In this document: positions 4,606 to 54,700 of the stretch, one piece after another
Layout of the letters: each line of letters starts with the position of its first letter
Numbering within the stretch: the first letter of the stretch is position 1
Assembly (NCBI RefSeq): GCF_963853765.1
Contig: NC_088859.1
Span: forward strand, 31,868,001-31,932,000
DNA length: 64,000 bases
Direction: 5' to 3'
Source of the DNA: Magallana gigas
Lineage: Eukaryota
Notes under the pieces: generated by a model
Database searches by the model: none
What the model saw: only the letters and a program-made list of their open reading frames with translations
Told to the model about the DNA's origin: nothing
Translations under genes and position numbers: made by a program

Positions 4606-7600
4606 ATGGTAAAATTGACAGCTGAATTAATAGAACAGTCGGCCCAGTATACAAACCCAGTTCGTGATAGGGAGCTGGATTTAAGAGGTAAAGTTGTCAA
4701 ATTTATTCACTAAATGAAAACTAAAATTTTCAGTTCGCGCGTCCTCTGTCTTCATTAACTCCAATCACAGGTCTCTGATATGTCTATCAGTCATCCGTTA
4801 AATGTAATGGAAGAGATATATGTATACCCTATCTATACATAATTATTTATATATAGATAGGGTATATCTATTTCCCTTCACATAAATTTAACGGCTTATT
4901 CGGATAGAAATTCAGAGGCTTGTGCCAAAATATCATATCTTCAAAGTTTGTGGCTAATGGATGAGTTCAGGTAAAGATGTATTTTAAAACTGATTGATTT
5001 ACGGACATTCTCAAAGAGAAGGGTGACATTTGCATGTAGAGGGATGTTACTTGGCCAGGTCTACAATATTTAATTTTGTCTACAGGACTCGGCAATTTTA
5101 TCATTGTTCAAGATAAATAAGAAACAGACAAAATCCTACCAGAGAATCCACAGGATGGCAGAGTTTTATCGCGTTTCTCTAATTTGTTATCCTACCAACA
5201 CTGAACACCACAAATTAACTCCTCATGATCAGTTAACCGTGTTATTTAATAAATTACTGATATTTATTTTCCTACATTGTAAAAAATTCCCGTTTAAAGT
5301 CATTTTAATTGTATTTCTGCTTATCTCAATCTTAAACAGTTTCAATAAAAAAATATGTACAAAAATAAATTAATCCAAAAAATTTTATCAGTAAGTTTTG
5401 TTAATTTTTTATTATAGAAAAAACAAAACCCAATATCTTAAAGTTAGTCATTTTTAAACTCTAGGGGATTCAAAATCAGTTCGCTATATCCATGTATTTG
5501 TTCTTACAACTTTATTTAACTGCAAAATTTGACAACTATTTTCTACGAAAAAATTTGCTATATTCGAGAACTTATTATTTCAATGTTTGCACTAAATGAG
5601 GATTACTGGAATTTTGAAAAAATTGTGTGAGTTTTTGTGAGAACCTTTAAATGGGAAAAATGTTAGATTTCAGCACTGATATGAATCTCCATTAAAAAAA
5701 ACAACTGTTTTTGTTCATTATATCAATTTCTCCAGGAAATTGTCCAAAAATAATGGAAATGGTTGTTTTGATCAGAATAATCACTATAGAATGTATTTAT
5801 ATTATGGAATGCATGTATCATATTCTATGATCAATTAACCATGCTATCTCATTTATTTTGATGCCATTCAATTTTGCTATATTTTTCACAAATTATTTAA
5901 ATTTAATTTGCAGGTTACAAAATTCCAGTGATTGAGAATATGGGTGCAACTCTGGTATTTATGTTTACTATATTGATACAAAATAATTATAATTTTTTAA
6001 CTGAAATCTTATTGGAAATAAAGTATGGAATCTTATTGGAAATAGTTTCAAATGGAAATCATTTGGGTATTAACAAAGTTAACTATGTTTTAATCCTTAG
6101 ATCTAATTTTAATTACAGGACCAGTTTGACACTATTGATCTATCAGACAACGACATAAGGAAATTCGATGGATTCCCTATTCTTCTCCGACTAAAAACTG
6201 TTTTACTCAATAACAACAGAGTTGTGTAAGTATTGAATTATGAGTTTATTGAGTTCACCATTCGGGGTGGTTTTGGTCTGTTCAAGAGTTGGTTGTATAA
6301 AACTGCTTGAAGTGTCAATGGTTAAATTCCAATGTTGGATATAAAAATTGGACCTACAAGCTTTAGACCTTCTTGTCAGCTAGAGGGTGTGCACACTCGC
6401 AACAAGGATCTCTCACTGTTCCATGGCTGTGGGCTGAACAATATTCTCATGTTATCTTTTTGAGGTCCTTCATCAGGAATTATTTATATCTTGTTATGTC
6501 TCAGTACAGTTACGCATGCCTTATTGAAAGATCAAATTTACAAAAACAAAGAAAATACAATGCAGTTACAATTCAGTAATGGCAGTAGAGAGACTTGTGG
6601 TAATGGACCAACTTTTAACAACACATTTTATGTCCAAATGTTATACCGTACTCTTTCATCTTTGAACTCTCTCTGGCTTGCAGAAGAATTGGTGAGGACT
6701 TGCATGAATGTCTTCCCAACTTAGAATCATTGGTTCTATCCAACAACAGCATGACAGAGTTAGGGGACTTGGATCCACTCTCCAATTTGAAATCATTACA
6801 ACACCTCAGGTACGAGTTTTTATTCTCTGACTGATTAAGATTTCGAAAAATTTGAATTATACAATTTTGTTAGATACTTCTCAAAATTGATCAAGCAACA
6901 TGTCTATATATATGTGATTTGAATGAAAAAAAAAATTGTTTCTTTTGATTGCAGTTTACTCCGAAATCCTGTCCAGTCAAAGAAACATTACAGATTATAC
7001 ATTGTTCATAAGATTCCTCAACTGAGAGTGTTGGACTTTCAAAGAATCAGGCAGAAGGTGAAGTGACGTTAACCTTTCCCTAAATGGATAATTATTTAAA
7101 AGATGAAAGAACTGTGTGCGGTATCATCCATTTTTTGACCCTAAAATTAAAGTTTTATAAAGAGCCTTAATAATAAAGTCGAAGATAGTTAAAATCATTT
7201 TGAAAATAAGGGTGTAAAAGGTTACCACCACATTGACGTCATAATGTAGAAATGATGTCATGAAGATTGCCTTTTTTTAGTAAATCAATGTCTTGTAGCA
7301 AAATATGGGTGTTTTCTGATGTTTTTTTGACTGGGAAACATCGAGCGCAGGCTTGCTCAAGTACCATTTTTAACCAGGTTTTCCAACGGAAAAATCCAGT
7401 TATTAAAATGGTGAAAATGGCAGGCGGGCGGCTGCCAAAAGGGTACCCTCATTGTACGGATAACTCCCCCTACAGTTCTCAAGATAGGAAGTTATTCTTT
7501 TGCAGATCAATTGTACATATATCAGAGGTGTGCATATTGCTAGGATTTTGATTTCTGATAATTTATGAAAAAAATACCAGCTTTTGAACTTAGTCATTTT

Positions 7601-9553
7601 CTGGCAAAATATTGCATATAGGGTACCCTCATTGTACGGATAATTCCCTCGACAGTTCTCAAGATAGGAAGTTATTCTTGTGCAGATCAATTATACATAT
7701 ATCAGAGGTGCGCATATTACTAGGATTTTGATTTCCGATAATTTATGAAAAAAACACCAGCTTTTGAACTTAGTCATTTTTTGGCAAAATATTGCATATA
7801 GGGTAACCTCATTATACGGATAACTCCTCCTACAGTTTTCAAGATAAGAAGTTGTTCTTTTGCAGATCAATTGTACTTATTTTAGAGGTATTGCTAGGAT
7901 TTTGATTTCCGATAATTTATGAAAAAAACCCAGCTTTTGAACTTAGTCTTTTTGGGGGCAAAATATTGCATATAGGGTACTCCATTTCACTGGATACAGG
8001 TTGACATGGATTATGGATACAGTTTACATAAATGAAAACCCGGTTTGCTGTCACATTGACAGCTTTTCACTTGTGTAGTATAATGTGTATAATTATCTGA
8101 AGAAAAACATATATTAAAATCGTACTTGAGCAAACCTGCGCTCTATACTTCCGAATGAAAAATATAAAACAAAAATGAGAACATTTTTACTTGTTTGGAA
8201 ATTTGTGGGAATTAGGTCATTTAGGTGACGTCATAGATAAACAGCGTATGAGTAATGATGACTAAAATCAAGATTAAAGTGATAGGTGTCGTCTGAACTA
8301 TGATATATGAAGATTTGATTTTTATATGATACTTTTTAAAAATTGGTTAAAATTGGAGGCAGATATTTGACCATACCACACATAGTCCTTTGCATGTACT
8401 GGTAAAATACAAAGACATATTTAAAAAGACATAATATATAAATCTTATTCTATAGGAAAGAGAGGCAGCTGCTAAAATGTTTAAAGGCAAAAAAGGACAA
8501 GCTCTTGCCTCAGATATTGGTAAACGCAGTAAAACATTTGTACCTGGAGAGAAGATTCCTGAGAAGAAAACCGGGCCATCTAAGGAAGACATAGAACTCA
8601 TCAAGGTCAGTCAAATATCAATGCATGTCTTATTTGTATCCATGTCTAAAAAAATAGTTACCGGTGATAGTATTGGATAGACCATTTGCAGTCATATAAC
8701 AAAAACTTGATTTGATAGAGGAAGAATAAGAGGTGGAGCAGTAAAATTACATCTAGAAACAGTTGTCTAGACTTCCAAATCTTTTACTCAGTTTTGATTT
8801 TTTTTTTGGCATATGTTGATAGACATTTTTGCACAAATTCAAATTTATTACACATTCTGTGGTTTTGCTGTTGGAGTAATATATCCCACTGTTATTCTAT
8901 AATTTTGTCCATTTTAAATTGAGTATCTGTTGATTTTTCTTTACTAATTCAATTTTAATTCTCTAGTTCATATATAACTCTGGTAGATTTGGCAGCATTG
9001 TCAAAATAGGATAGTTTGTGTTTTTATCTGAGTACCAGCACATGCTCTGTGTGAAACACATTTAAGACAAAAAGCTATTTATCAAATGAATTCCAAATAT
9101 TTATATAACAACTTGTTTTGTTTCATTTATACTAGCCATTAACCATTTATTGATGTTTGGTTGTAGATGGCAATTGCCAAAGCTAAAACTCTGAATGAAG
9201 TGGAGAGATTAAACCAAATGCTTAAAACAGGAGTCATCCCAGGCAAGGAGTTGAAAAAACTCAGGGGTAAGTGCAATGAGTCAAAAGTGATCACAAAAGA
9301 TTTGGGATTTGAAAAGGAGTAAACTTACTGTGTGGCTTTTAAATATAACTACAGAATCCAGGAAATATTAATTGTACATGTATTATCATGCATGTTTCTT
9401 TGCAGTTGGTATTCAAATTTTAGTAATGATTAAAGTATTTCGGATTATTTTCCACTAATGTCAGAGATGATTGTACAGTGTCTTGTATTGATTATAGGGG
9501 AGAGGGTAGAGGAAGAGGAGGATGAGGATATGGAGGTGGTCAATGGAACCTGA
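4606..9553 (+). CDS. SNRPA1: U2 small nuclear ribonucleoprotein A' (LRR protein), 8 coding exons
   Basis: Exons 4606-4687, 5914-5954, 6119-6225, 6684-6809, 6955-7057, 8456-8605, 9167-9266, 9498-9553; all GT-AG and phase-compatible. Translation MVKLTAELIEQSAQYTNPVRDRELDLRGYKIPVIENMGATLDQFDTIDLSDNDIRKFDGFP...LLRNPVQSKKHYRLYIVHKIPQLRVLDFQRIRQKER matches the U2A' family. Confidence 0.97.
4767..4924. repeat. Imperfect fold-back element in SNRPA1 intron 1
   Basis: Inverted arms around a central ATACCCTATCTATA / TATAGATAGGGTAT pair; outer arms CCGTTAAAT / ATTTAACGG. Approximate boundaries. Confidence 0.5.
7365..8075 (+). mobile_element. HINE/Helentron-like non-autonomous element with three ~180-bp internal tandem units (SNRPA1 intron 5)
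   Basis: Units start at 7441, 7621 and 7801 (GGGTACCCTCATTGTACGGATAA...). Unique left box (TTTTAACCAGGTTTTCC...GGCGGGCGGCTG) and right box (...GTCACATTGACAGC) recur at 38925-39530. Confidence 0.65.
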
Positions 9554-42275: not shown

Positions 42276-44858
42276 TTTTTTAGCTCACCTGAACCGAAGG
42301 TTCAAGTGAGCTTTTCTGATCACCCGTTGTCCGTCGTCCGTCCGTCCGTCTGTCTGTCTGTCCGTCCGTCTGTAAACTTTTCACATTTTCAACTTCTTCT
42401 CAAAAACCACTAGGCCAAATTTAACCAAATTTGGTACAAAGCATCCTTATGGAAAGGGGATTATAAATTGTTAAAATAAAGGGCACAGCCCTTTTCAAAA
42501 GGGAGATAATTGCGAAACAGTGAGTATAGGGTGCATGTCTTTAAAAATCTTCTTCTCAAGAACCACTGCACCAGAAATGCCAATATTTACACAAAAGCTT
42601 GTATATATAGTGAAGATTCTAAATTGTAAAAATCGTGACCCTCGGACCAAAACTGGGGCCCCAGGCGGGGTTCAAAGTTTAACATAGAAATACATAGGAA
42701 AATGTTTAAAAAATCTTCTTCTCAAGAACCACTGCACCAGAAATGCCAATATTTACACAAAAGCTTGTATATATAGTGAAGATTCTAAATTGTAAAAATC
42801 GTGACCCTCGGACCAAAACTGGGGCCCCAGGCAGGGTTCAAAGTTTAACATATATAGAAATACATAGGAAAATGTTTAAAAAATCTTCTTCTCAAGAACC
42901 ACTGCACCAGAAATGCCAATATTTACACAAAAGCTTGTATACATAGTGAAGATTCTAAATTGTAAAAATCGTGACCCTCGGACCAAAACTGGGGCCCCAG
43001 GCGGGGTTCAAAGTTTAACATAGAAATACATAGGAAAATGTTTAAAAAATCTTCTTCTCAAGAACCACTGCACCAGGAATGCCAATATTTACACAAAAGC
43101 TTGTATACAAAGTGAAGATTCTAAATTGTAAAAATCATGACCGTCGGACCAAAACTGGGGCCCCAGGCGGGGTTCAAAGTTTAACATAGAAATACATAGG
43201 AAAATGTTTTAAAAATCTTCTTCTCAAGAACCACTGCACCAGAAATGCCAATATTTACACAAAGGCTTGTATATATAGTGAAGATTCTAAATTGTAAAAA
43301 TCGTGACCCTCGGACCAAAACTGGGGCCCCAGGCGGGGTTCAAAGTTTAACATAGAAATACATAGGAAAATGTTTAAAAAATCTTCTTCTCAAGAACCAC
43401 TGCACCAGAAATGCCAATATTTACACAAAAGCTTGTATGTATAATGAAGATTCTAAATTGTAAAAATCGTGACCCTCGGACCAAAACTGGGGCCCCAGGC
43501 GGGGATCAAAATTTAACATAGAACTACATATGAAAAATGTTTAAAAATTTTCTTCTCAAGAACCACTTCACCAAAAATGCCAATACATACACAAAAGGTT
43601 GTATATATAGTGAAGATTGAAAAAATCGTGACCCCCGAACAAAAGTGGGGCCCCAGGAGGGGTTTAGATTTTAACATATATAGGAAAATGTTTTAAAATC
43701 TTCTCAAGAACCATCGTGCAACTGTTTGGGATATTACTATGCATACATGTACATCCTTAAATAATGTAGATTCAAAAAATTGTAACTCCCGGACAATTGA
43801 TGGGCACCAAGAGGGGTTCAAAATTTAAACATTTTAAAAAACAAAGGAAAAGTTTAAAAATTTTCTTCTCAAGAACTACAATGTTTTAGTTAATGGAATA
43901 TCTATGCATGCATCCTTCGCTTATGTAGATTCATAATTCGTAAAATCGTGACCCCCGGACCAATAATGGGGCCCCAAGATGGGGTCAAAGTTTATTATAG
44001 AAATATAAAGGTAACAGGTTAAAAAATCTTCTTCTCGAAAACTACAATGCTTCAATTTGTGAGATTACTATCATGCATACAACCTTGGATAATGAAGGTT
44101 CGACAGTTTTAAATTAGTGACCCCTGGACTAATACTAGGGACCCAAGATGGGTTTAAAGTTAAATGTAGAAGTACCGGTATATATGGAAAATGTTTAAAA
44201 ATCTTCTTTTCGAGAACTACAATGCATCAATTTGTCAGATAACTACGTAAGCACCCTCAGATAGTGTAGATTCGAAATTATAAAAGCCGTGACCTCAATC
44301 TAATACTGAGGCCCCAAGAGGTGTTCAAAGTTTAGCGTAGAAATATAGAGGGAAAATGTTGAAAAATCTTTTTCTAGGGAACTATAATGCTTCAGCTTGT
44401 GAGATAACTATTCAAGCATCCTTAAATAATGTAAACTTTAGCACTGAACTAATACTGTGGCCCCAAAAGGGGTTCAAAGTTTAACATAGAAAGATATATT
44501 GAAAATGTTTTTAAAAAGTTCTTCTCGAGAACTATAATGCTACAGTTTGTGAGATTACTATGCAAGGATCCTCAAATTGTGTAAACTCTAATGTAGTGGA
44601 ACCAAGAGTTATCTTTCTTAATGTTCTGTACAGTCTGAGAGTTATTCCTCTTGAAGTGGAACTCTTCTACGTTCAGTTTTTCAGGTTGTGTACGTGCGGT
44701 CCCACCGCAGTGCTACACATTTTCATTCCTATGTTACTATTTATGTTGTTCAAGCCAACCATAAACCTCGGACCATTACTGGGTCCCCAGAAAGGGGTTC
44801 AATGTTTAAAATAGAAAAAGCATATGCTACGAAATGTAATGTTACAAGGAACTGCTGT

Positions 44859-48797: not shown

Positions 48798-51700
48798 GAT
48801 TAAACATTCTTTCCTTGTGCATGAATATACAAAATTACCGGTACGAAGAAGTTATTGTAGCATTACATATATAATGAGCATAATTAACAACTAATATTGT
48901 TTAGATTTTCTTTTACAAGACTTACATTCTGAAAGACATTGGTGAGCTCGAGTGGCCCCCTGCCAGCACCACTTCCAAGCCACAGAGCTGACTTGGAACC
49001 ACACTGGTACTTCTTCTGCAGGGAGAGGCAATGTTGTGCCACATTATGTGGAAACGTGTCACGGAACCCAAACTCCAGCTCAATGATTCCATATAAGGAG
49101 TCCTCCGTATCGTAGCTGTAGTGATAGTTGGTGGTGGGAACCCATTTATACTCTACCTCATCAGCATCTGGAATTTCTTTCTCTGCAAGTTTATGAGTCT
49201 TGTTTAATCATTAAGTTGTAAAAAGACATAAAATATTAACATTGATTAAAGACTTGGTGGAACTGTTAGAGTTTTTCTAGGGTGTTGTGGAAGCCTTAAT
49301 TTTTAATGGGGCCAAAATGTGAGTGTTGCTGGCAAAATAAAGGGCATAATGTCATAGACAGAAAACTGTAGAATTTCTTACCCTCTACACCAACTCCGAG
49401 AACAAAAACCTCATCCTTGACCATTCTGGCCGGGACATTAATTTTGTCGGCTAGTTGTAGAGATCGAGCGATTCGGAATCCAGCATGCTGAATGAAATGT
49501 CTTCTGAAGGCAAATCGGGCAAACTTAGATGCTTCATCCCCAGTAGAGACCCAAGAACCACCCTGAAATTTAGAAGGTTGAAAATACTGTAGGTTTTCCT
49601 TGTTAAACATAAGGAATTAAAATGACAAGAAGCAACTCTTTCGGATTTTAAAATCTTGTTTTTATTTTTCAGAAAGTTTTGAATTCAATGAAGTTTTATT
49701 TTAACAAATAAATTGATAGTTGCGATTTGATACAAAACAACAAAATCGCGTGATAAATACTAGTGGAAAATAAGGCATCGGCAGTAAAACCATGGCAACC
49801 TCACAGATTTCCTGAAAGCCTTTACTCATCTTAAATAAAACCAAGTACATGTATTTTCCAGTGCTCACCAGAATAAGGTTATGTCTACCATCAAAGCAGG
49901 GGGAGGAGAAGTCGTCATAATACCAGTGGCTGCTGTAACCGTTCAGTCCATTGAAGTGGTCCTCGGCCCACTCCCAAGCATTTCCAAACACGTCATGGTA
50001 TCCAAGCTCGTTGGCAGGGTACATGTTGACTGGCTGTAAAACAACCAATCAACTTTCAACTTGTACATCACTCTTGTTTGACCAAAAAATGTTGATATTT
50101 AGTTTCAAGGGTCAAATTTTGGAAAAATAAGATAAAGAATGCAGACTTTCTCTCACTTCACCATACAAAGGGGAATTACTCAATTTTTAAAATAAAATTT
50201 TAATAGAAGACTGTGTTCACTCGATTTTGATGGTGTTTACCTAATGTACCTGGTAGTGGTGCTGAGAAAATACTATATTCATTTCATGGGGGCATGAAAA
50301 GGAAAACCAAACAAAGAAATTAAGATGAAAGCAAAGAAAATATCAGGTACAATTGATCTTACTGTAGATGAACCATAGTGCAGGTTAATATTGGCTTTTG
50401 GCTTCTTCTGGTAGATAATGTCTCCATCTATGCCATGTGTAGTTTCCAACTGAAATCAGTAAAATCACACATAAATATTCTCCAAAAATATTAAAACAAT
50501 CACAATCACACTTAAGTACACGAGACCTATCTTCCATTTTTTCTATTTCTTCCCATCTCCACAATTTGAAGATTTCCACTAAGTAATTCCATGATTATGT
50601 TTTCATGTTATATGATACTTTTTTAATCAAGATATTGAAAATGTATAGTATGGCTTTATTTATAGGCATTAAAATGCATTTTGCATGCTATTTTATGGAA
50701 AATTCTAACTATTCTAGCTCCTAAAATAGCCTGGTAATGTACCTTGAAATTTTGGGAAGTAACAGGTTTGAATGTTAATAAATAAGGAATAATATATCAA
50801 GGAAAATTATATAAAATTGATGAACCTCTGGTGTGTCCTTAACAGTAAAAATACCTTCTTTCCTTTAATCACATTTCTCTCAGCTTCAGTCAGAAGTCTG
50901 AAACCAAATCCTTTCCACGCACAGAAAGCGCGCGCTTGATGATAGTTCACCTCAGCCGGCCAATCAACAGGCAGGGGGAGCACATCAAACATGGCTCTGT
51001 ACCTACACAAACCATCCATCACAAGAAATGAGATTCAGTCCAAGTACATTTAACACATTCAATTCCAAAACAGTAAGTAGACATGACTCACATATAAGTC
51101 CTCTTTTCCCCGCCATTGATGACCTCTCTGGAGTGACCATTGGTCAGGGATCCGTTTATGACCCCATTGGTCCCATTGTTAGGAAAATGGCAGGGTGAGT
51201 ACTTGGACAAATCAGCACCACAGCCTCCCTTACAACCTGGAAGAAAAGTAACAAGAGCTTTCAAATAATGCTGTATGAGTTAAACTATAACTTTGTGCTG
51301 ATACAGGTACTTGAGAACAATTGAGATTTAATCATGACACTTGAAATTTATAGCTATAACTTGGTGTAATTAAAAATTATTGGATTATCAATAAGAAAGG
51401 TAAAAATATAGTGTCCCAGGTCCAAAAAGTGAATATAAGAAGGAAAACTGTTTTTTGATATACATGTATATCCTATGTGCAACACAAGATGGCCACTTCC
51501 TTCACCATGGTTGCAGACCCAGAAGACGGGGTGTCTGGACTTACCGTGGTTACAGACCCAGAAGACCGGGTGTCTGGACTTACCGTGGTTACAGAACCAG
51601 AAGACCGGGTGTCTGGACTTACCATGGTTACAGAACCAGAAGACGGGGTGTCTGGACTTACCGTGGTTACAGAACCAGAAGACCGGGTGTCTGGACTTAC

Positions 51701-54700
51701 CGTGGTTACAGAACCAGAAGACGGGGTGTCTGGACTTACCGTGGTTGCAGACCCAGAAGACGGGGTGTCTGGACTTACCATGGTTACAGAACCAGAAGAC
51801 GGGGTGTCTGGACTTACCGTGGTTGCAGACCCAGAAGACGGGGTGTCTGGACTTACCGTGGTTACAGAACCAGAAGACGGGGTGTCTGGACTTACCGTGG
51901 TTGCAGACCCAGAAGACGGGGTGTCTGGACTTACCATGGTTACAGAACCAGAAGACGGGGTGTCTGGACTTACCGTGGTTGCAGACCCAGAAGACGGGGT
52001 GTCTGGACTTACCATGGTTACAGAACCAGAAGACGGGGTGTCTGGACTTACCGTGGTTGCAGACCCAGAAGACGGGGTGTCTGGACTTACCGTGGTTACA
52101 GAACCAGAAGACGGGGTGTCTGGACTTACCGTGGTTGCAGACCCAGAAGACGGGGTGTCTGGACTTACCATGGTTACAGAACCAGAAGACGGGGTGTCTG
52201 GACTTACCGTGGTTGCAGACCCAGAAGACGGGGTGTCTGGACTTACCATGGTTACAGAACCAGAAGACGGGGTGTCTGGACTTACCGTGGTTACAGACCT
52301 AGAAGACGGGGTGTCTGGACTTACCGTGGTTACAGAACCAGAAGACGGGGTGTCTGGACTTACCATGGTTACAGAACCAGAAGACGGGGTGTCTGGACTT
52401 ACCGTGGTTACAGACCTAGAAGACACGGGTGTCTGGACTTATCGTGGTTACAGACCCAGAAGACAGGGGTGTCTGAACTTACCATGGTTGCAGACCAAGA
52501 AGACGGAGTGTCTGGACTTACCATGGTTGCAGACCCAGAAGACGGGGTGTTTGGACTGTCGGTACACCTTCCACTTCCAGCCCTCCTCCGTCCAGAACTT
52601 CTCATCCTCATATCCACCGCTCTCCACAAACTCCAGATACTCCCCATTAGTGATCATAAATTTGGATGCTTCAAATGCAGGGACTCTACAAATGAAAACA
52701 TCATTGTTATAAAACTTTTGTCTGCATTACTCTAAATGGCTTTAATGGATCAACTATTCAAAGTTAGTGGTTAACAGTCACAAGATCCAAACTAAGCTTA
52801 ACCTGGTGGAGAACTCTCCATATTCATTGTCCCATCCGTACGATGGAAAGTCTTTCGGTTTCCCAAAGGTGACATCTTGTGTCTCCACAGATATCAAAGG
52901 ATTCTCCTCCACTCTACCACCTGCATTCAGCATAAGTGAACAACATTTTCTATCACTGTAATCCCTCTATTCGAGATATCATTTAAAAACATCTCTTCAC
53001 ATCATAGCTTTGGCCATCAAATTCTGATCTTACCACATTTGAATGGAGCATACACCCATCCCTTTGGCTTGGTGACCATTTCAACAGGAAGCTGACGGAT
53101 CAACACAGAGGAGGTCTCCAGATGAATTCTTTCATGCTCAATGCCCATCAAAATGGCCCACTACAAAATATATTACCAAATACTGTACGAAAATGAAGAG
53201 ATGAAAACCTCTTAAAACATCCACAATAACTCACTTAAACTAAATCAACAAAAAATTATAACAGCTTTAAGCAAAAAATCCCAGGGAAAAAACACAATTC
53301 AGTTTTTAAAATATCCATATACGAATATATTATTTTTTCTTAAAGGACAATTATACCCATGGAGATTCCATTGTGACGGGGAGATCCAGTGGTGTGTCAT
53401 GAATAACCTTCAAGACCAGGTTACGCACATTTCTCCTGTACTCAACAACGGAGCTCAGTGAGGGCCACTTGTAACTGCCACCCATTCGGTAGTTCTCCTG
53501 TAAAATCAACTTTAAATTACTGTCTTAAAAATTTCATTTCAATGTTTACTTTGGAAACACAATTATGAAAAGGATAAGAACAACTTGTTTTAGTTACAAT
53601 AATTCAGCACCTGTTTTACAGCAAAATAAGGAAATAATATGAATTCGACTCTGTTGGGAGGGATAAAAAAGACCCCATAAAATTTTAACCCCTTAATAAA
53701 TTAGATAAAGTTGTCCAAATTTGACAAAGATTATAAAAAGAACTTTTACCGTATCATCCCAGGACATTTCATCGACACCTGTTTCAAACATGGTCTCAAA
53801 TTCCAAGTTGACTCGTTCCTAGAATCAGTGAAAGTTCATGATACACTTAGATCAAGTATTCAAATAACCGTCTTTCCAGGTCAAGACTTTCTGATCCGCT
53901 CCACTCAACATACATGTACATTGTGAGAAGCTGAGCGGATCAGAAACCCTCCACTTGGGAAAATGATAAATAACTTGATTTAACAGAGTGGTTTCCTTAT
54001 GTAATCACAATAAAATTTGCATCGTTCATATACCCTGGTTATTCAAAATTATTTCTACAAATTTTTTTTTAGAAATGATCTTATGTTGATTCAAAACTTT
54101 CTGTATTCACGTAAAATATAAAATTATATTAATCCCTGATAAAAAGTTCCAGATTAATCCCCATAATTTTACACTTAAATTTTTGTAAGTGCTTTTAAGC
54201 TTTCTCCTAACAGATCGTTTTGAAATTAAAGTTATGTACAACAAATATGAAAATACATGTACAACATACCTTAATAAGGCCGGCCAACATTAGTTTGTTG
54301 ACATACACCACTGCCGTATGGCAAAAGTAAAAAATCAGTGGCAGTCGTAATCGGTCTGGGCATTTGTAAAAAACAGAATCGTCTGGAAAGTAATGAAAAA
54401 GAAGTTTTAAAACAAAATGTCTATAAAAATGCAATATAAATCTGTTGGTCTTCGCAGTATGAATAAAATTAAATGAAATATCTTCAACATTTTATTATAA
54501 GTTTACTATTTACTTTTAATTTATTTGTATTGAGTTGACATGAATCTAAATCATAATATTTTTTGAGAGTTCAATCAAAAAATTTCATCAGATTGTATGA
54601 GAGTGTGTGAGGGAGTGAGAGAATACAAACAATGTTGCTCAATATATACTGGTAATATTACCTTCTATTAATTAAAGTTAATCATTGAGTTTTACAAAAA

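What the first reader, a model, noticed from the sequence alone, without database searches (positions are those of the whole stretch)
51504..52557. Splice-donor minisatellite: about 25 tandem copies of the OvoA exon 8 end plus a consensus 5' splice site
The 39-bp unit is the last 36 nt of the exon plus GTA. Each unit junction builds a perfect G|GTAAGT donor, whereas the most distal unit ends in the weaker G|GTGAAG, plausibly the ancestral donor. The unit is 13 codons and open in the OvoA frame (HPVFWVCNHGKSR), so each downstream donor could in principle add 13 aa with a Cys and two His. However, units 3 and 4 from the exon each carry a 1-nt insertion, unit 3 has a broken donor (GATAAG) and an in-frame TAA. 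So only donor 1 (52522) and donor 2 (52483, +GKSRHSVFLVCNH) give protein; all distal donors give premature-stop, probably NMD-targeted, mRNA. The array could act as a copy-number-tunable decoy or rheostat for ovothiol synthesis, with the proximal frameshifts guarding the protein. The structure is seen; the function is inference.
Basis: partly seen in the sequence, partly recalled or inferred. Interest (0 to 1): 0.86.

Follow-up and report, generated by a model that had tools for sequence, protein, structure and literature searches.

The report
Splice-donor minisatellite in oyster OvoA intron
A 39-base piece spanning the end of an exon and its splice signal in the oyster ovothiol-synthase gene has been copied 27 times in tandem, but some oysters lack the array, the stable mRNA uses only the first copy, and the same kind of repeat is already known from two human genes.

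Summary
Window 51504-52557 holds 27.0 tandem copies of a 39-bp unit. The unit is the last about 36 nt of OvoA coding exon 8 (minus strand) plus the start of intron 8. There are 25 G|GTAAGT donors, one broken donor (GATAAG, unit 3) and a distal G|GTGAAG.

The unit occurs nowhere else in the 564-Mb genome. Three other oyster lineages lack the array and have GTGAGG or GTGAGT donors. Five short-read contigs from other runs, under 1% diverged in the flank, join exon 8 directly to GTGAAGG. Another contig lacks unit 2. So the array is young and structurally polymorphic.

The one informative RNA assembly joins donor 1 to exon 9 at depth 346. Units 2-3 sit at about depth 2, the same as ordinary intron. 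All listed oyster OvoA proteins have the canonical NH(G/S)CKGGCG junction. Nothing supports the decoy or rheostat idea, although raw-read sampling was too thin to exclude isoforms that are rare or cleared by nonsense-mediated decay (NMD).

The closest known cases are the human ABCA7 intron-18 and CBS exon-13/intron-13 VNTRs. This is a new member of a known kind, of moderate interest.

The parts
52522..52685 (-). OvoA coding exon 8 (FGE-sulfatase domain). Its last about 36 nt are unit 1 of the array.
   Evidence: Pfam PF03781 hit on its translation. tblastn of C. gigas OvoA P0287. RNA contig piece 52524-52685 joined to 52803 upstream and to 51236 downstream.
51502..52557 (-). 39-bp minisatellite of 27 units. 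The unit-type string is ABCDEFGEHEHFHEHEHFHEHFIEIJK.
   Evidence: TRF 51504-52557, period 39, 27.0 copies. Unit-by-unit split. The unit is found only here in the 564-Mb genome.
52516..52524 (-). Donor 1, ATG|GTAAGT. This is the working 5' splice site of exon 8. Its +5 and +6 bases come from the start of unit 2.
   Evidence: RNA contig joint 51236 to 52524 at depth 345.9.
52479..52517 (-). Unit 2, which carries donor 2 (last exon base 52483). It is the only other in-frame donor and would add GKSRHSVFLVCNH. One other allele lacks this unit.
   Evidence: phase 1. L012 goes from unit 1 straight to unit 3.
52439..52478 (-). Unit 3: 40 nt with a 1-nt insertion, an in-frame stop and a broken donor GATAAG. 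The donor is intact (GTAAGT) in another allele, L011.
52399..52438 (-). Unit 4: 40 nt with a second 1-nt insertion. All later donors are out of phase.
51814..52281 (-). Two identical 234-bp blocks of six units each (units 8-13 = units 14-19, pattern EHEHFH). They mark a recent block duplication by unequal exchange or slippage.
   Evidence: A 156-bp query matches at 100% identity at two places 234 bp apart.
51500..51540 (-). Distal unit 27, ending in ATG|GTGAAG. This is the original, weaker donor, identical to the junction in array-less haplotypes.
51237..51499 (-). Unique remainder of intron 8, down to the acceptor.
   Evidence: Aligns to array-less contigs at 98.5-99.2% identity.
51090..51236 (-). 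OvoA coding exon 9 (G|GT TGT AAG..., giving GCKGGCG...).
   Evidence: RNA contig piece 51090-51236. tblastn. Junction conserved across molluscs.

Best explanation
This is a young, locus-specific, structurally polymorphic minisatellite (VNTR) in intron 8 of the oyster OvoA gene (5-histidylcysteine sulfoxide synthase).

A 39-bp segment straddling the exon 8 / intron 8 boundary was duplicated in tandem, most simply by replication slippage. It then expanded to 27 units by further slippage or unequal exchange, most recently in 234-bp six-unit blocks. The junction between unit 1 and unit 2 turned the original weak donor G|GTGAAG into a consensus G|GTAAGT, and every later junction repeats it.

The spliceosome uses the first, exon-attached copy. 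The other 24 consensus donors and the old distal donor lie inside the intron and are removed with it. Any transcript spliced from donor 3 or later carries a stop in unit 3 and would be unproductive.

On present evidence the array is a near-neutral intronic VNTR. At most it has a minor quantitative effect on productive splicing, as described for the human ABCA7 and CBS donor-spanning VNTRs.

Shown: the structure, the gene identity, the unique locus, absence in other species, array-less and variant alleles, and donor 1 in the dominant mRNA. Inferred: the slippage mechanism, near-neutrality, and NMD of distal-donor products.
For: Structure and frames.

Gene identity and conserved NHG|CKGGCG junction.

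The unit matches only inside this array in the whole genome.

Orthologous junction without an array:
- four contigs of a Crassostrea-like species with 88-93% DNA identity, ACG|GTGAGG;
- Saccostrea echinata GCA_033153115.1, ACG|GTGAGG;
- C. virginica-type contigs, ATG|GTGAGT.

Array-less contigs from five runs pass from exon 8 directly into GTGAAGGAAGTGG and continue about 710 nt. In the 840-bp upstream flank they differ from the window by 0.7-0.95%. Array-bearing contigs of other individuals differ by the same amount, and the other species differs by 6%.

Array-bearing variant alleles: L011 has an intact unit-3 donor and L012 lacks unit 2. Both come from the same accession series as array-less contigs.

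Both ends of the array appear in DNA contigs of a second species label (X4).

RNA: a 2445-nt contig at depth 345.9 joins exon 8 to 51236 with no extra unit. The residual depth over units 2-3 is about 2, against 2.9 for plain intron at 51218-51373.

All 14 listed oyster OvoA proteins checked (Crassostrea and Saccostrea, from annotation and transcript assemblies) have the canonical NH(G/S)CKGGCG junction with no extra unit.
Against: Donor use could not be counted. The two raw poly(A) runs gave only 5 and 4 reads on the 2.9-kb stretch. Contigs drop rare isoforms, and NMD would lower the steady-state level of distal-donor products.

One X21 read appears to join exon 9 to 24 nt that the aligner placed inside the array (bin 52155-52251) and not at the exon end. 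This fits an H-type unit donor. It fits equally a donor-1 product of the known CAC allele of exon 8, so it is ambiguous.

Array-less status rests on k=31 short-read contigs. The exon end and the distal unit share exactly one 31-mer, so a chimeric path exists in principle. I count this unlikely because array-bearing samples break their contigs at that node (X4, L011, L012). It is not excluded without long reads.

Copy number in the window was not checked against long reads.
Confidence: 0.65

Rival explanations
1. Quantitative splicing modifier, as in ABCA7 and CBS. The extra donors bind U1 and divert a fraction of pre-mRNAs to out-of-frame, NMD-targeted products, or they slow intron removal. 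Longer arrays would then give less OvoA.
For: There are 24 further consensus G|GTAAGT sites within 1 kb downstream of the real donor.

Human precedents exist. ABCA7 VNTR length correlates inversely with expression, and a cryptic donor one unit into the array gives a frameshifted isoform (PMC5954066). The CBS 31-bp VNTR spans exon 13 / intron 13 and is listed with reduced enzyme activity (PMC2630376, PMC1395315).

One ambiguous X21 read.
Against: Steady-state RNA over units 2-3 is about 0.6% of exon depth, no higher than plain intron. No variant isoform appears among the listed proteins. No expression data by genotype are available.
Confidence: 0.2
2. Compensatory donor upgrade. In the C. gigas lineage the donor had decayed to ATG|GTGAAG, with +5 G changed to A relative to GTGAGG or GTGAGT in other oysters. 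The first duplication placed GT after GGT.A and created a consensus donor at the exon end, so the array allele splices exon 8 better. This could have helped it spread. It could also tolerate the -1 G>A (Gly to Ser) allele.
For: Matches to CAG|GTAAGT out of 9: array-less donor 4, other oysters 5-6, donor 1 in the array allele 7.

A CACA|GT (Ser) allele exists in RNA run X15, which also holds array words, and in the older C. gigas protein record P0284.
Against: Array-less haplotypes persist and are found in at least five runs. There is no splicing comparison between alleles. A single duplication would suffice, so 27 copies are not explained. Linkage of the Ser allele to the array was not shown.
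Confidence: 0.1
3. Assembly artefact: the array, or its length, was produced by mis-assembly of the reference.
For: Copy number was not verified with long reads. No Nanopore run was listed.
Against: Independent short-read contigs from other individuals and from a second species label contain the exon-to-unit-2/3 junction, internal units, and the distal unit-to-intron junction (records 6-9; L011 and L012). At least 14 runs from several studies hold 70-81% of the sampled words of the stretch.
Confidence: 0.03

Closest known systems
Human ABCA7 intron-18 25-bp VNTR (De Roeck et al. 2018, PMC5954066)
   Same: The tandem array starts at the exon's splice donor, so every unit begins with a donor-like GT. 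It is highly length-polymorphic. Use of the donor one unit in gives a frameshifted, PTC-containing isoform.
   Different: The human unit is purely intronic apart from the GT, is C-rich, and reaches hundreds of copies. There, length is shown to correlate with lower expression and exon 19 skipping. In the oyster the unit includes about 36 nt of coding sequence, each unit carries a full consensus GTAAGT, and no expression effect has been measured.
Human CBS 31-bp VNTR c.1444_1467+7 at the exon 13 / intron 13 boundary (Lievers et al. 2001, as cited in PMC2630376 and PMC1395315)
   Same: The repeat unit is made of the exon end (24 nt) plus the first intron bases (7 nt), so the donor is reiterated. 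There are 16-21 copies with single-base variants between units. The gene is an enzyme of sulfur amino-acid metabolism.
   Different: The CBS VNTR is reported to be associated with reduced enzyme activity. I could read only secondary citations, not the primary paper. In the oyster there is also a zero-copy (array-less) allele, and frameshifting insertions in units 3-4.
Human CBS c.844_845ins68
   Same: A duplication across an intron/exon boundary creates two competing splice sites, of which one is strongly preferred, leaving normal mRNA (PMC2630376).
   Different: [quoted passage not shown] The C. virginica-type 95-bp duplication at the exon 8 acceptor (L010) is the closer parallel to this one.

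Membership tests
Exon/intron-boundary (splice-donor) VNTR, ABCA7 / CBS type | The tandem array begins at, and includes, the authentic 5' splice site of the upstream exon. | tested here: met
   Unit 1 is the exon 8 end plus GTAA. The array is contiguous from 52557 to 51502. An RNA contig confirms the exon end.
Exon/intron-boundary (splice-donor) VNTR, ABCA7 / CBS type | Each repeat unit reiterates a donor-like GT site. | tested here: met
   25 G|GTAAGT, 1 G|GTGAAG and 1 broken GATAAG.
Exon/intron-boundary (splice-donor) VNTR, ABCA7 / CBS type | The number or structure of units varies among individuals. | tested here: met
   Array-less contigs in five runs. An allele lacking unit 2 (L012) and an allele with different units 2-3 (L011). 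Flank divergence is within the species range. Caveats: these are short-read contigs, and the copy numbers of long alleles were not measured.
Exon/intron-boundary (splice-donor) VNTR, ABCA7 / CBS type | Internal donors are used and give aberrant isoforms. | tested here: inconclusive
   No array-internal joint in the RNA contigs. Depth over units 2-3 is about 2, against 346 for the exon. Raw reads were too few, and one read is ambiguous.
Exon/intron-boundary (splice-donor) VNTR, ABCA7 / CBS type | Array length correlates with expression or enzyme activity. | not testable with these tools
   This needs genotyped individuals with RNA or ovothiol measurements.
OvoA (5-histidylcysteine sulfoxide synthase) | DinB_2 plus FGE-sulfatase plus C-terminal methyltransferase architecture, and orthology to named OvoA proteins. 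| tested here: met
   PF03781 on exon 8. Homologues carry PF12867 and PF03781, and several also methyltransferase families, and are named 5-histidylcysteine sulfoxide synthase. The window encodes C. gigas P0287 exon by exon, mostly at 90-100% identity; lower-identity rows are HSPs that run past exon ends.
Regulated unproductive splicing (AS-NMD switch) | The alternative PTC-introducing site is conserved across related species. | tested here: not met
   The array is absent in three other oyster lineages and in some conspecific haplotypes.
Regulated unproductive splicing (AS-NMD switch) | A PTC isoform is detectable and its share changes with conditions. | tested here: inconclusive
   Not detected in one RNA assembly. 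There are no condition series and no NMD block.

The most novel reading that the evidence does not exclude
The array is not neutral. It spread because the first duplication repaired a decayed donor (GTGAAG to GTAAGT). Its 24 extra consensus U1 sites now set, by copy number, how much OvoA pre-mRNA is spliced productively. This would give oysters a heritable, fast-mutating dial for ovothiol synthesis. It would also be a natural test bed for how a spliceosome chooses among 25 identical 5' splice sites.
Probability: 0.1. Interest if true: 0.65.

Novelty: new member of a known kind. Interest (0 to 1): 0.4.

Why it matters
It is a clean natural example of a tandem array of consensus 5' splice sites attached to a working exon. 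An array-less allele seems to segregate in the same species complex. That makes allele-specific comparison of splicing possible in heterozygous oysters without any engineering. The comparison bears on how the first of many identical donors is chosen, and on whether donor-spanning VNTRs generally depress expression, as reported for ABCA7 and CBS. For oyster biology it flags a structural polymorphism in the key enzyme of ovothiol synthesis. It also flags a Gly/Ser change at an otherwise invariant junction codon. As it stands it is a structural curiosity with no demonstrated function.

Tried and rejected
- Raw poly(A) RNA runs X21 and X22 were laid to count donor use. Only 5 and 4 reads fell on the 2.9-kb stretch, so no counts were possible.
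- A search for Nanopore DNA runs to check array length listed none.
- A full-text search for the run accessions of the array-less and array-bearing contigs, meant to learn their species labels, returned only unrelated papers.
- A look-up of the genomic loci of C. virginica OvoA isoform P0282 and of ORF P0001 found nothing on record.
- A search for truncated (about 324-aa) OvoA products ending in the array read-through, using P0287:1-330, scored nothing. This says little given the tool's length window.
- A literature search for OvoA in oysters found no mention of this repeat.
- Primary papers on competing 5' splice sites (Eperon 1993, 2000) are not held. The rule that fully occupied strong donors favour the one nearest the acceptor is therefore quoted from my own knowledge only.
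- I considered that the array-less contigs are k=31 collapse artefacts. I rejected this as unlikely because array-bearing samples break contigs exactly at the shared 31-mer (records 6 and 10; L011, L012).
- The plus-strand ORFs of 275-426 aa across the array are repeat translations, not genes.
Full report
**1. What is in the sequence**

The minus strand of window 52685-52522 is a coding exon. Its translation (VPAFEASKFMITNGEYLEF...HPVFWVCNH) hits the FGE-sulfatase domain PF03781.

tblastn of the 760-aa Crassostrea gigas protein P0287 (XP_011413777.2, annotated 'ergothioneine biosynthesis protein 1 isoform X1') places 17 coding pieces on the minus strand between 57386 and 47361. This is the eighth piece. 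Homologues of the family carry DinB_2 and FGE-sulfatase domains, several also methyltransferase domains. Several sources name them 5-histidylcysteine sulfoxide synthase. So the gene is OvoA and the genome is a C. gigas-type oyster.

Tandem Repeats Finder gives one array at 51504-52557: period 39, 27.0 copies, 93% matches. Splitting it unit by unit shows that unit 1 is the exon end plus GTAA. Units 2-26 follow head to tail. Unit 27 ends in GGTGA and runs into unique intron.

There are 25 G|GTAAGT sites, one GATAAG in unit 3, and the distal ATG|GTGAAG. Units 3 and 4 each have one extra base. Read-through from the exon hits a stop in unit 3. Only donors 1 (52522) and 2 (52483) are in the phase that fits exon 9. 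The copy count is 27 including the exon copy.

**2. Origin and dynamics**

A 156-bp piece of the array matches only inside the array in the whole 564-Mb assembly. It is therefore not a dispersed satellite or a transposon fragment. It arose in place from the exon/intron junction.

The unit-type string is ABCDEFGEHEHFHEHEHFHEHFIEIJK. Units 8-13 and 14-19 are identical six-unit (234-bp) blocks. This is the mark of recent block duplication by unequal exchange or slippage.

Units 2-27 all read CCAGACAC where the exon reads CCAAACAC. This fits amplification from the second copy and not from the exon copy itself.

**3. Comparison with other oysters**

ORFs called on public short-read contigs that run from exon 8 into the intron gave access to the orthologous junction. 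All of the following have a single copy of the 39-bp segment:
- four contigs of a species 88-93% identical in DNA, reading ACG|GTGAGG (L004-L007);
- Saccostrea echinata, ACG|GTGAGG (L008);
- C. virginica-type contigs, ATG|GTGAGT (L009, L010).

The array is therefore specific to the C. gigas lineage. The original donor there had already lost the +5 G (GTGAAG). It matches CAG|GTAAGT at 4 of 9 positions, against 5-6 in the other oysters and 7 for donor 1 of the array allele.

**4. Polymorphism**

Five contigs from five runs carry an exon 8 identical to the window, followed directly by GTGAAGGAAGTGGCC. They continue about 710 nt into the unique intron, exon 9 and beyond, with no unit in between (L001-L003, L020, L021).

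In the 840-bp upstream flank they differ from the window by 0.7-0.95%. Array-bearing contigs of other individuals (L011, L012) differ by the same amount. The other species differs by about 6%.

At 51448 and 51456-51457, the array-bearing contig of a second species label (X4) shares the bases of the array-less contigs against the window. So flanking variation does not sort by array status.

Array-bearing and array-less contigs come from the same accession series: SRR6063078, SRR6063087 and SRR6063108 versus SRR6063233, and ERR13868521 versus ERR13868480. I could not learn the species labels of these runs.

There is a technical caveat. The exon end and the distal unit share exactly one 31-mer, so a k=31 graph of an array-bearing genome contains a chimeric array-skipping path. 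However, where the array is present the contigs stop at that node: X4 records 6 and 10, and L011 and L012 ending 47-94 nt into the array. I therefore read the pass-through contigs as real array-less haplotypes. They may be ancestral, or revertants from exchange between units 1 and 27.

L012 goes from unit 1 to unit 3 with only 20 shared bases at the two junctions. That cannot be a graph collapse, so an allele without unit 2, and hence without the only other in-frame donor, exists. In L011 the unit-3 donor is intact, but the frameshifting insertion and the stop are the same.

**5. RNA**

Of the runs laid, the two raw poly(A) libraries gave 5 and 4 reads, which is too few.

The assembled RNA run X15 has a 2445-nt contig at mean depth 345.9. 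It joins 53357|53160, 53032|52918, 52803|52685, then exon 8 to 51236, then 51090|51000. That is the canonical mRNA, with no extra 39 nt.

The two bases at the exon end differ from the window: the mRNA reads CAC A|GT where the window has CAT G|GT. The same His-Ser reading is in the older C. gigas record P0284, while 13 other listed oyster (Crassostrea and Saccostrea) proteins read His-Gly. So this is a real allele that changes the -1 base of the donor and an otherwise invariant Gly.

In bin 52446-52542, the 21 exon positions account for 74.9 of the 76.6 mean depth. That leaves about 2 over units 2-3. A plain-intron contig at 51218-51373 has depth 2.9. Array contigs have depth 1.5-14 for words that recur about ten times. 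Array-containing RNA is thus at the level of unspliced background, roughly 0.6% of exon depth.

One X21 read seems to join exon 9 to 24 nt laid in bin 52155-52251. That is the end of an H-type unit. It is also identical to the exon end of the CAC-G allele seen in X4, so the read is uninformative.

None of the 15 listed members of the oyster OvoA cluster has a +13-aa form.

**6. Mechanism**

The best-supported reading is that the first, exon-attached consensus donor is used and the rest of the array is spliced out as intron.

From general knowledge, not tested here: exon definition and co-transcriptional 'first come' pairing would favour donor 1. In-vitro work on competing strong donors would instead predict a bias to the acceptor-proximal site. 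Products of donors 3 to 27 would carry a stop far upstream of the last junction and be NMD substrates.

The data exclude a large steady-state pool of such products in one sample. They do not exclude a modest diverted fraction.

Two non-neutral variants remain open. One is a length-dependent drag on expression, as in ABCA7 and CBS. The other is a compensatory upgrade of a decayed donor.

**7. Comparison with known systems**

[quoted passage not shown] Its length correlates inversely with expression (PMC5954066).

The CBS 31-bp VNTR is written c.1444_1467+7, that is 24 exon bases plus 7 intron bases, with 16-21 copies. It is listed with reduced enzyme activity (PMC2630376, PMC1395315).

The oyster array meets the structural criteria of this class. 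The functional criteria are untested.

**8. Verdict**

The origin story is supported and extended by the array-less and variant alleles and by the lineage specificity. The decoy or rheostat function is unsupported.

This is a new member of a known kind. It is of moderate interest, chiefly as a natural system for studying 5' splice-site choice.

Noticed in passing
window 52522-52523 (minus strand, last two bases of exon 8): There is an allelic CAT G|GT versus CAC A|GT difference. RNA contig X15 and the older C. gigas protein record P0284 read His-Ser where the window and 13 other oyster proteins read His-Gly. The Gly is invariant in an 8-species mollusc alignment, and the change also alters the -1 base of the donor. 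A third allele, CAC G, is seen in X4.
   Followed up: partly
L010:159-329 (C. virginica-type contig): A 95-bp tandem duplication (1.8 copies, 87% match) covers the 3' end of intron 7 and the first about 30 nt of exon 8. So the acceptor side of the same exon is duplicated in another oyster. ORF P0163 shows up to three copies of ...EASKFMI....
   Followed up: partly
window 50700-50893: DNA contig word depth in run X4 jumps to about 1830-1860, against about 9 elsewhere. Many contigs, including all the array-less ones, end at about 50791-50796. A high-copy repeat or transposon lies just downstream of coding exon 10.
   Followed up: no
window 42535-43678 and 7440-7980: Two other sizeable tandem arrays are present: 166 bp x 6.9 copies (94% match) and 180 bp x 3.0 copies. 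Neither was examined.
   Followed up: no
window 52592-52741: One of the five X21 poly(A) reads appears to cover exon 8 together with about 56 nt of unspliced intron 7. These libraries therefore contain pre-mRNA or DNA background.
   Followed up: no
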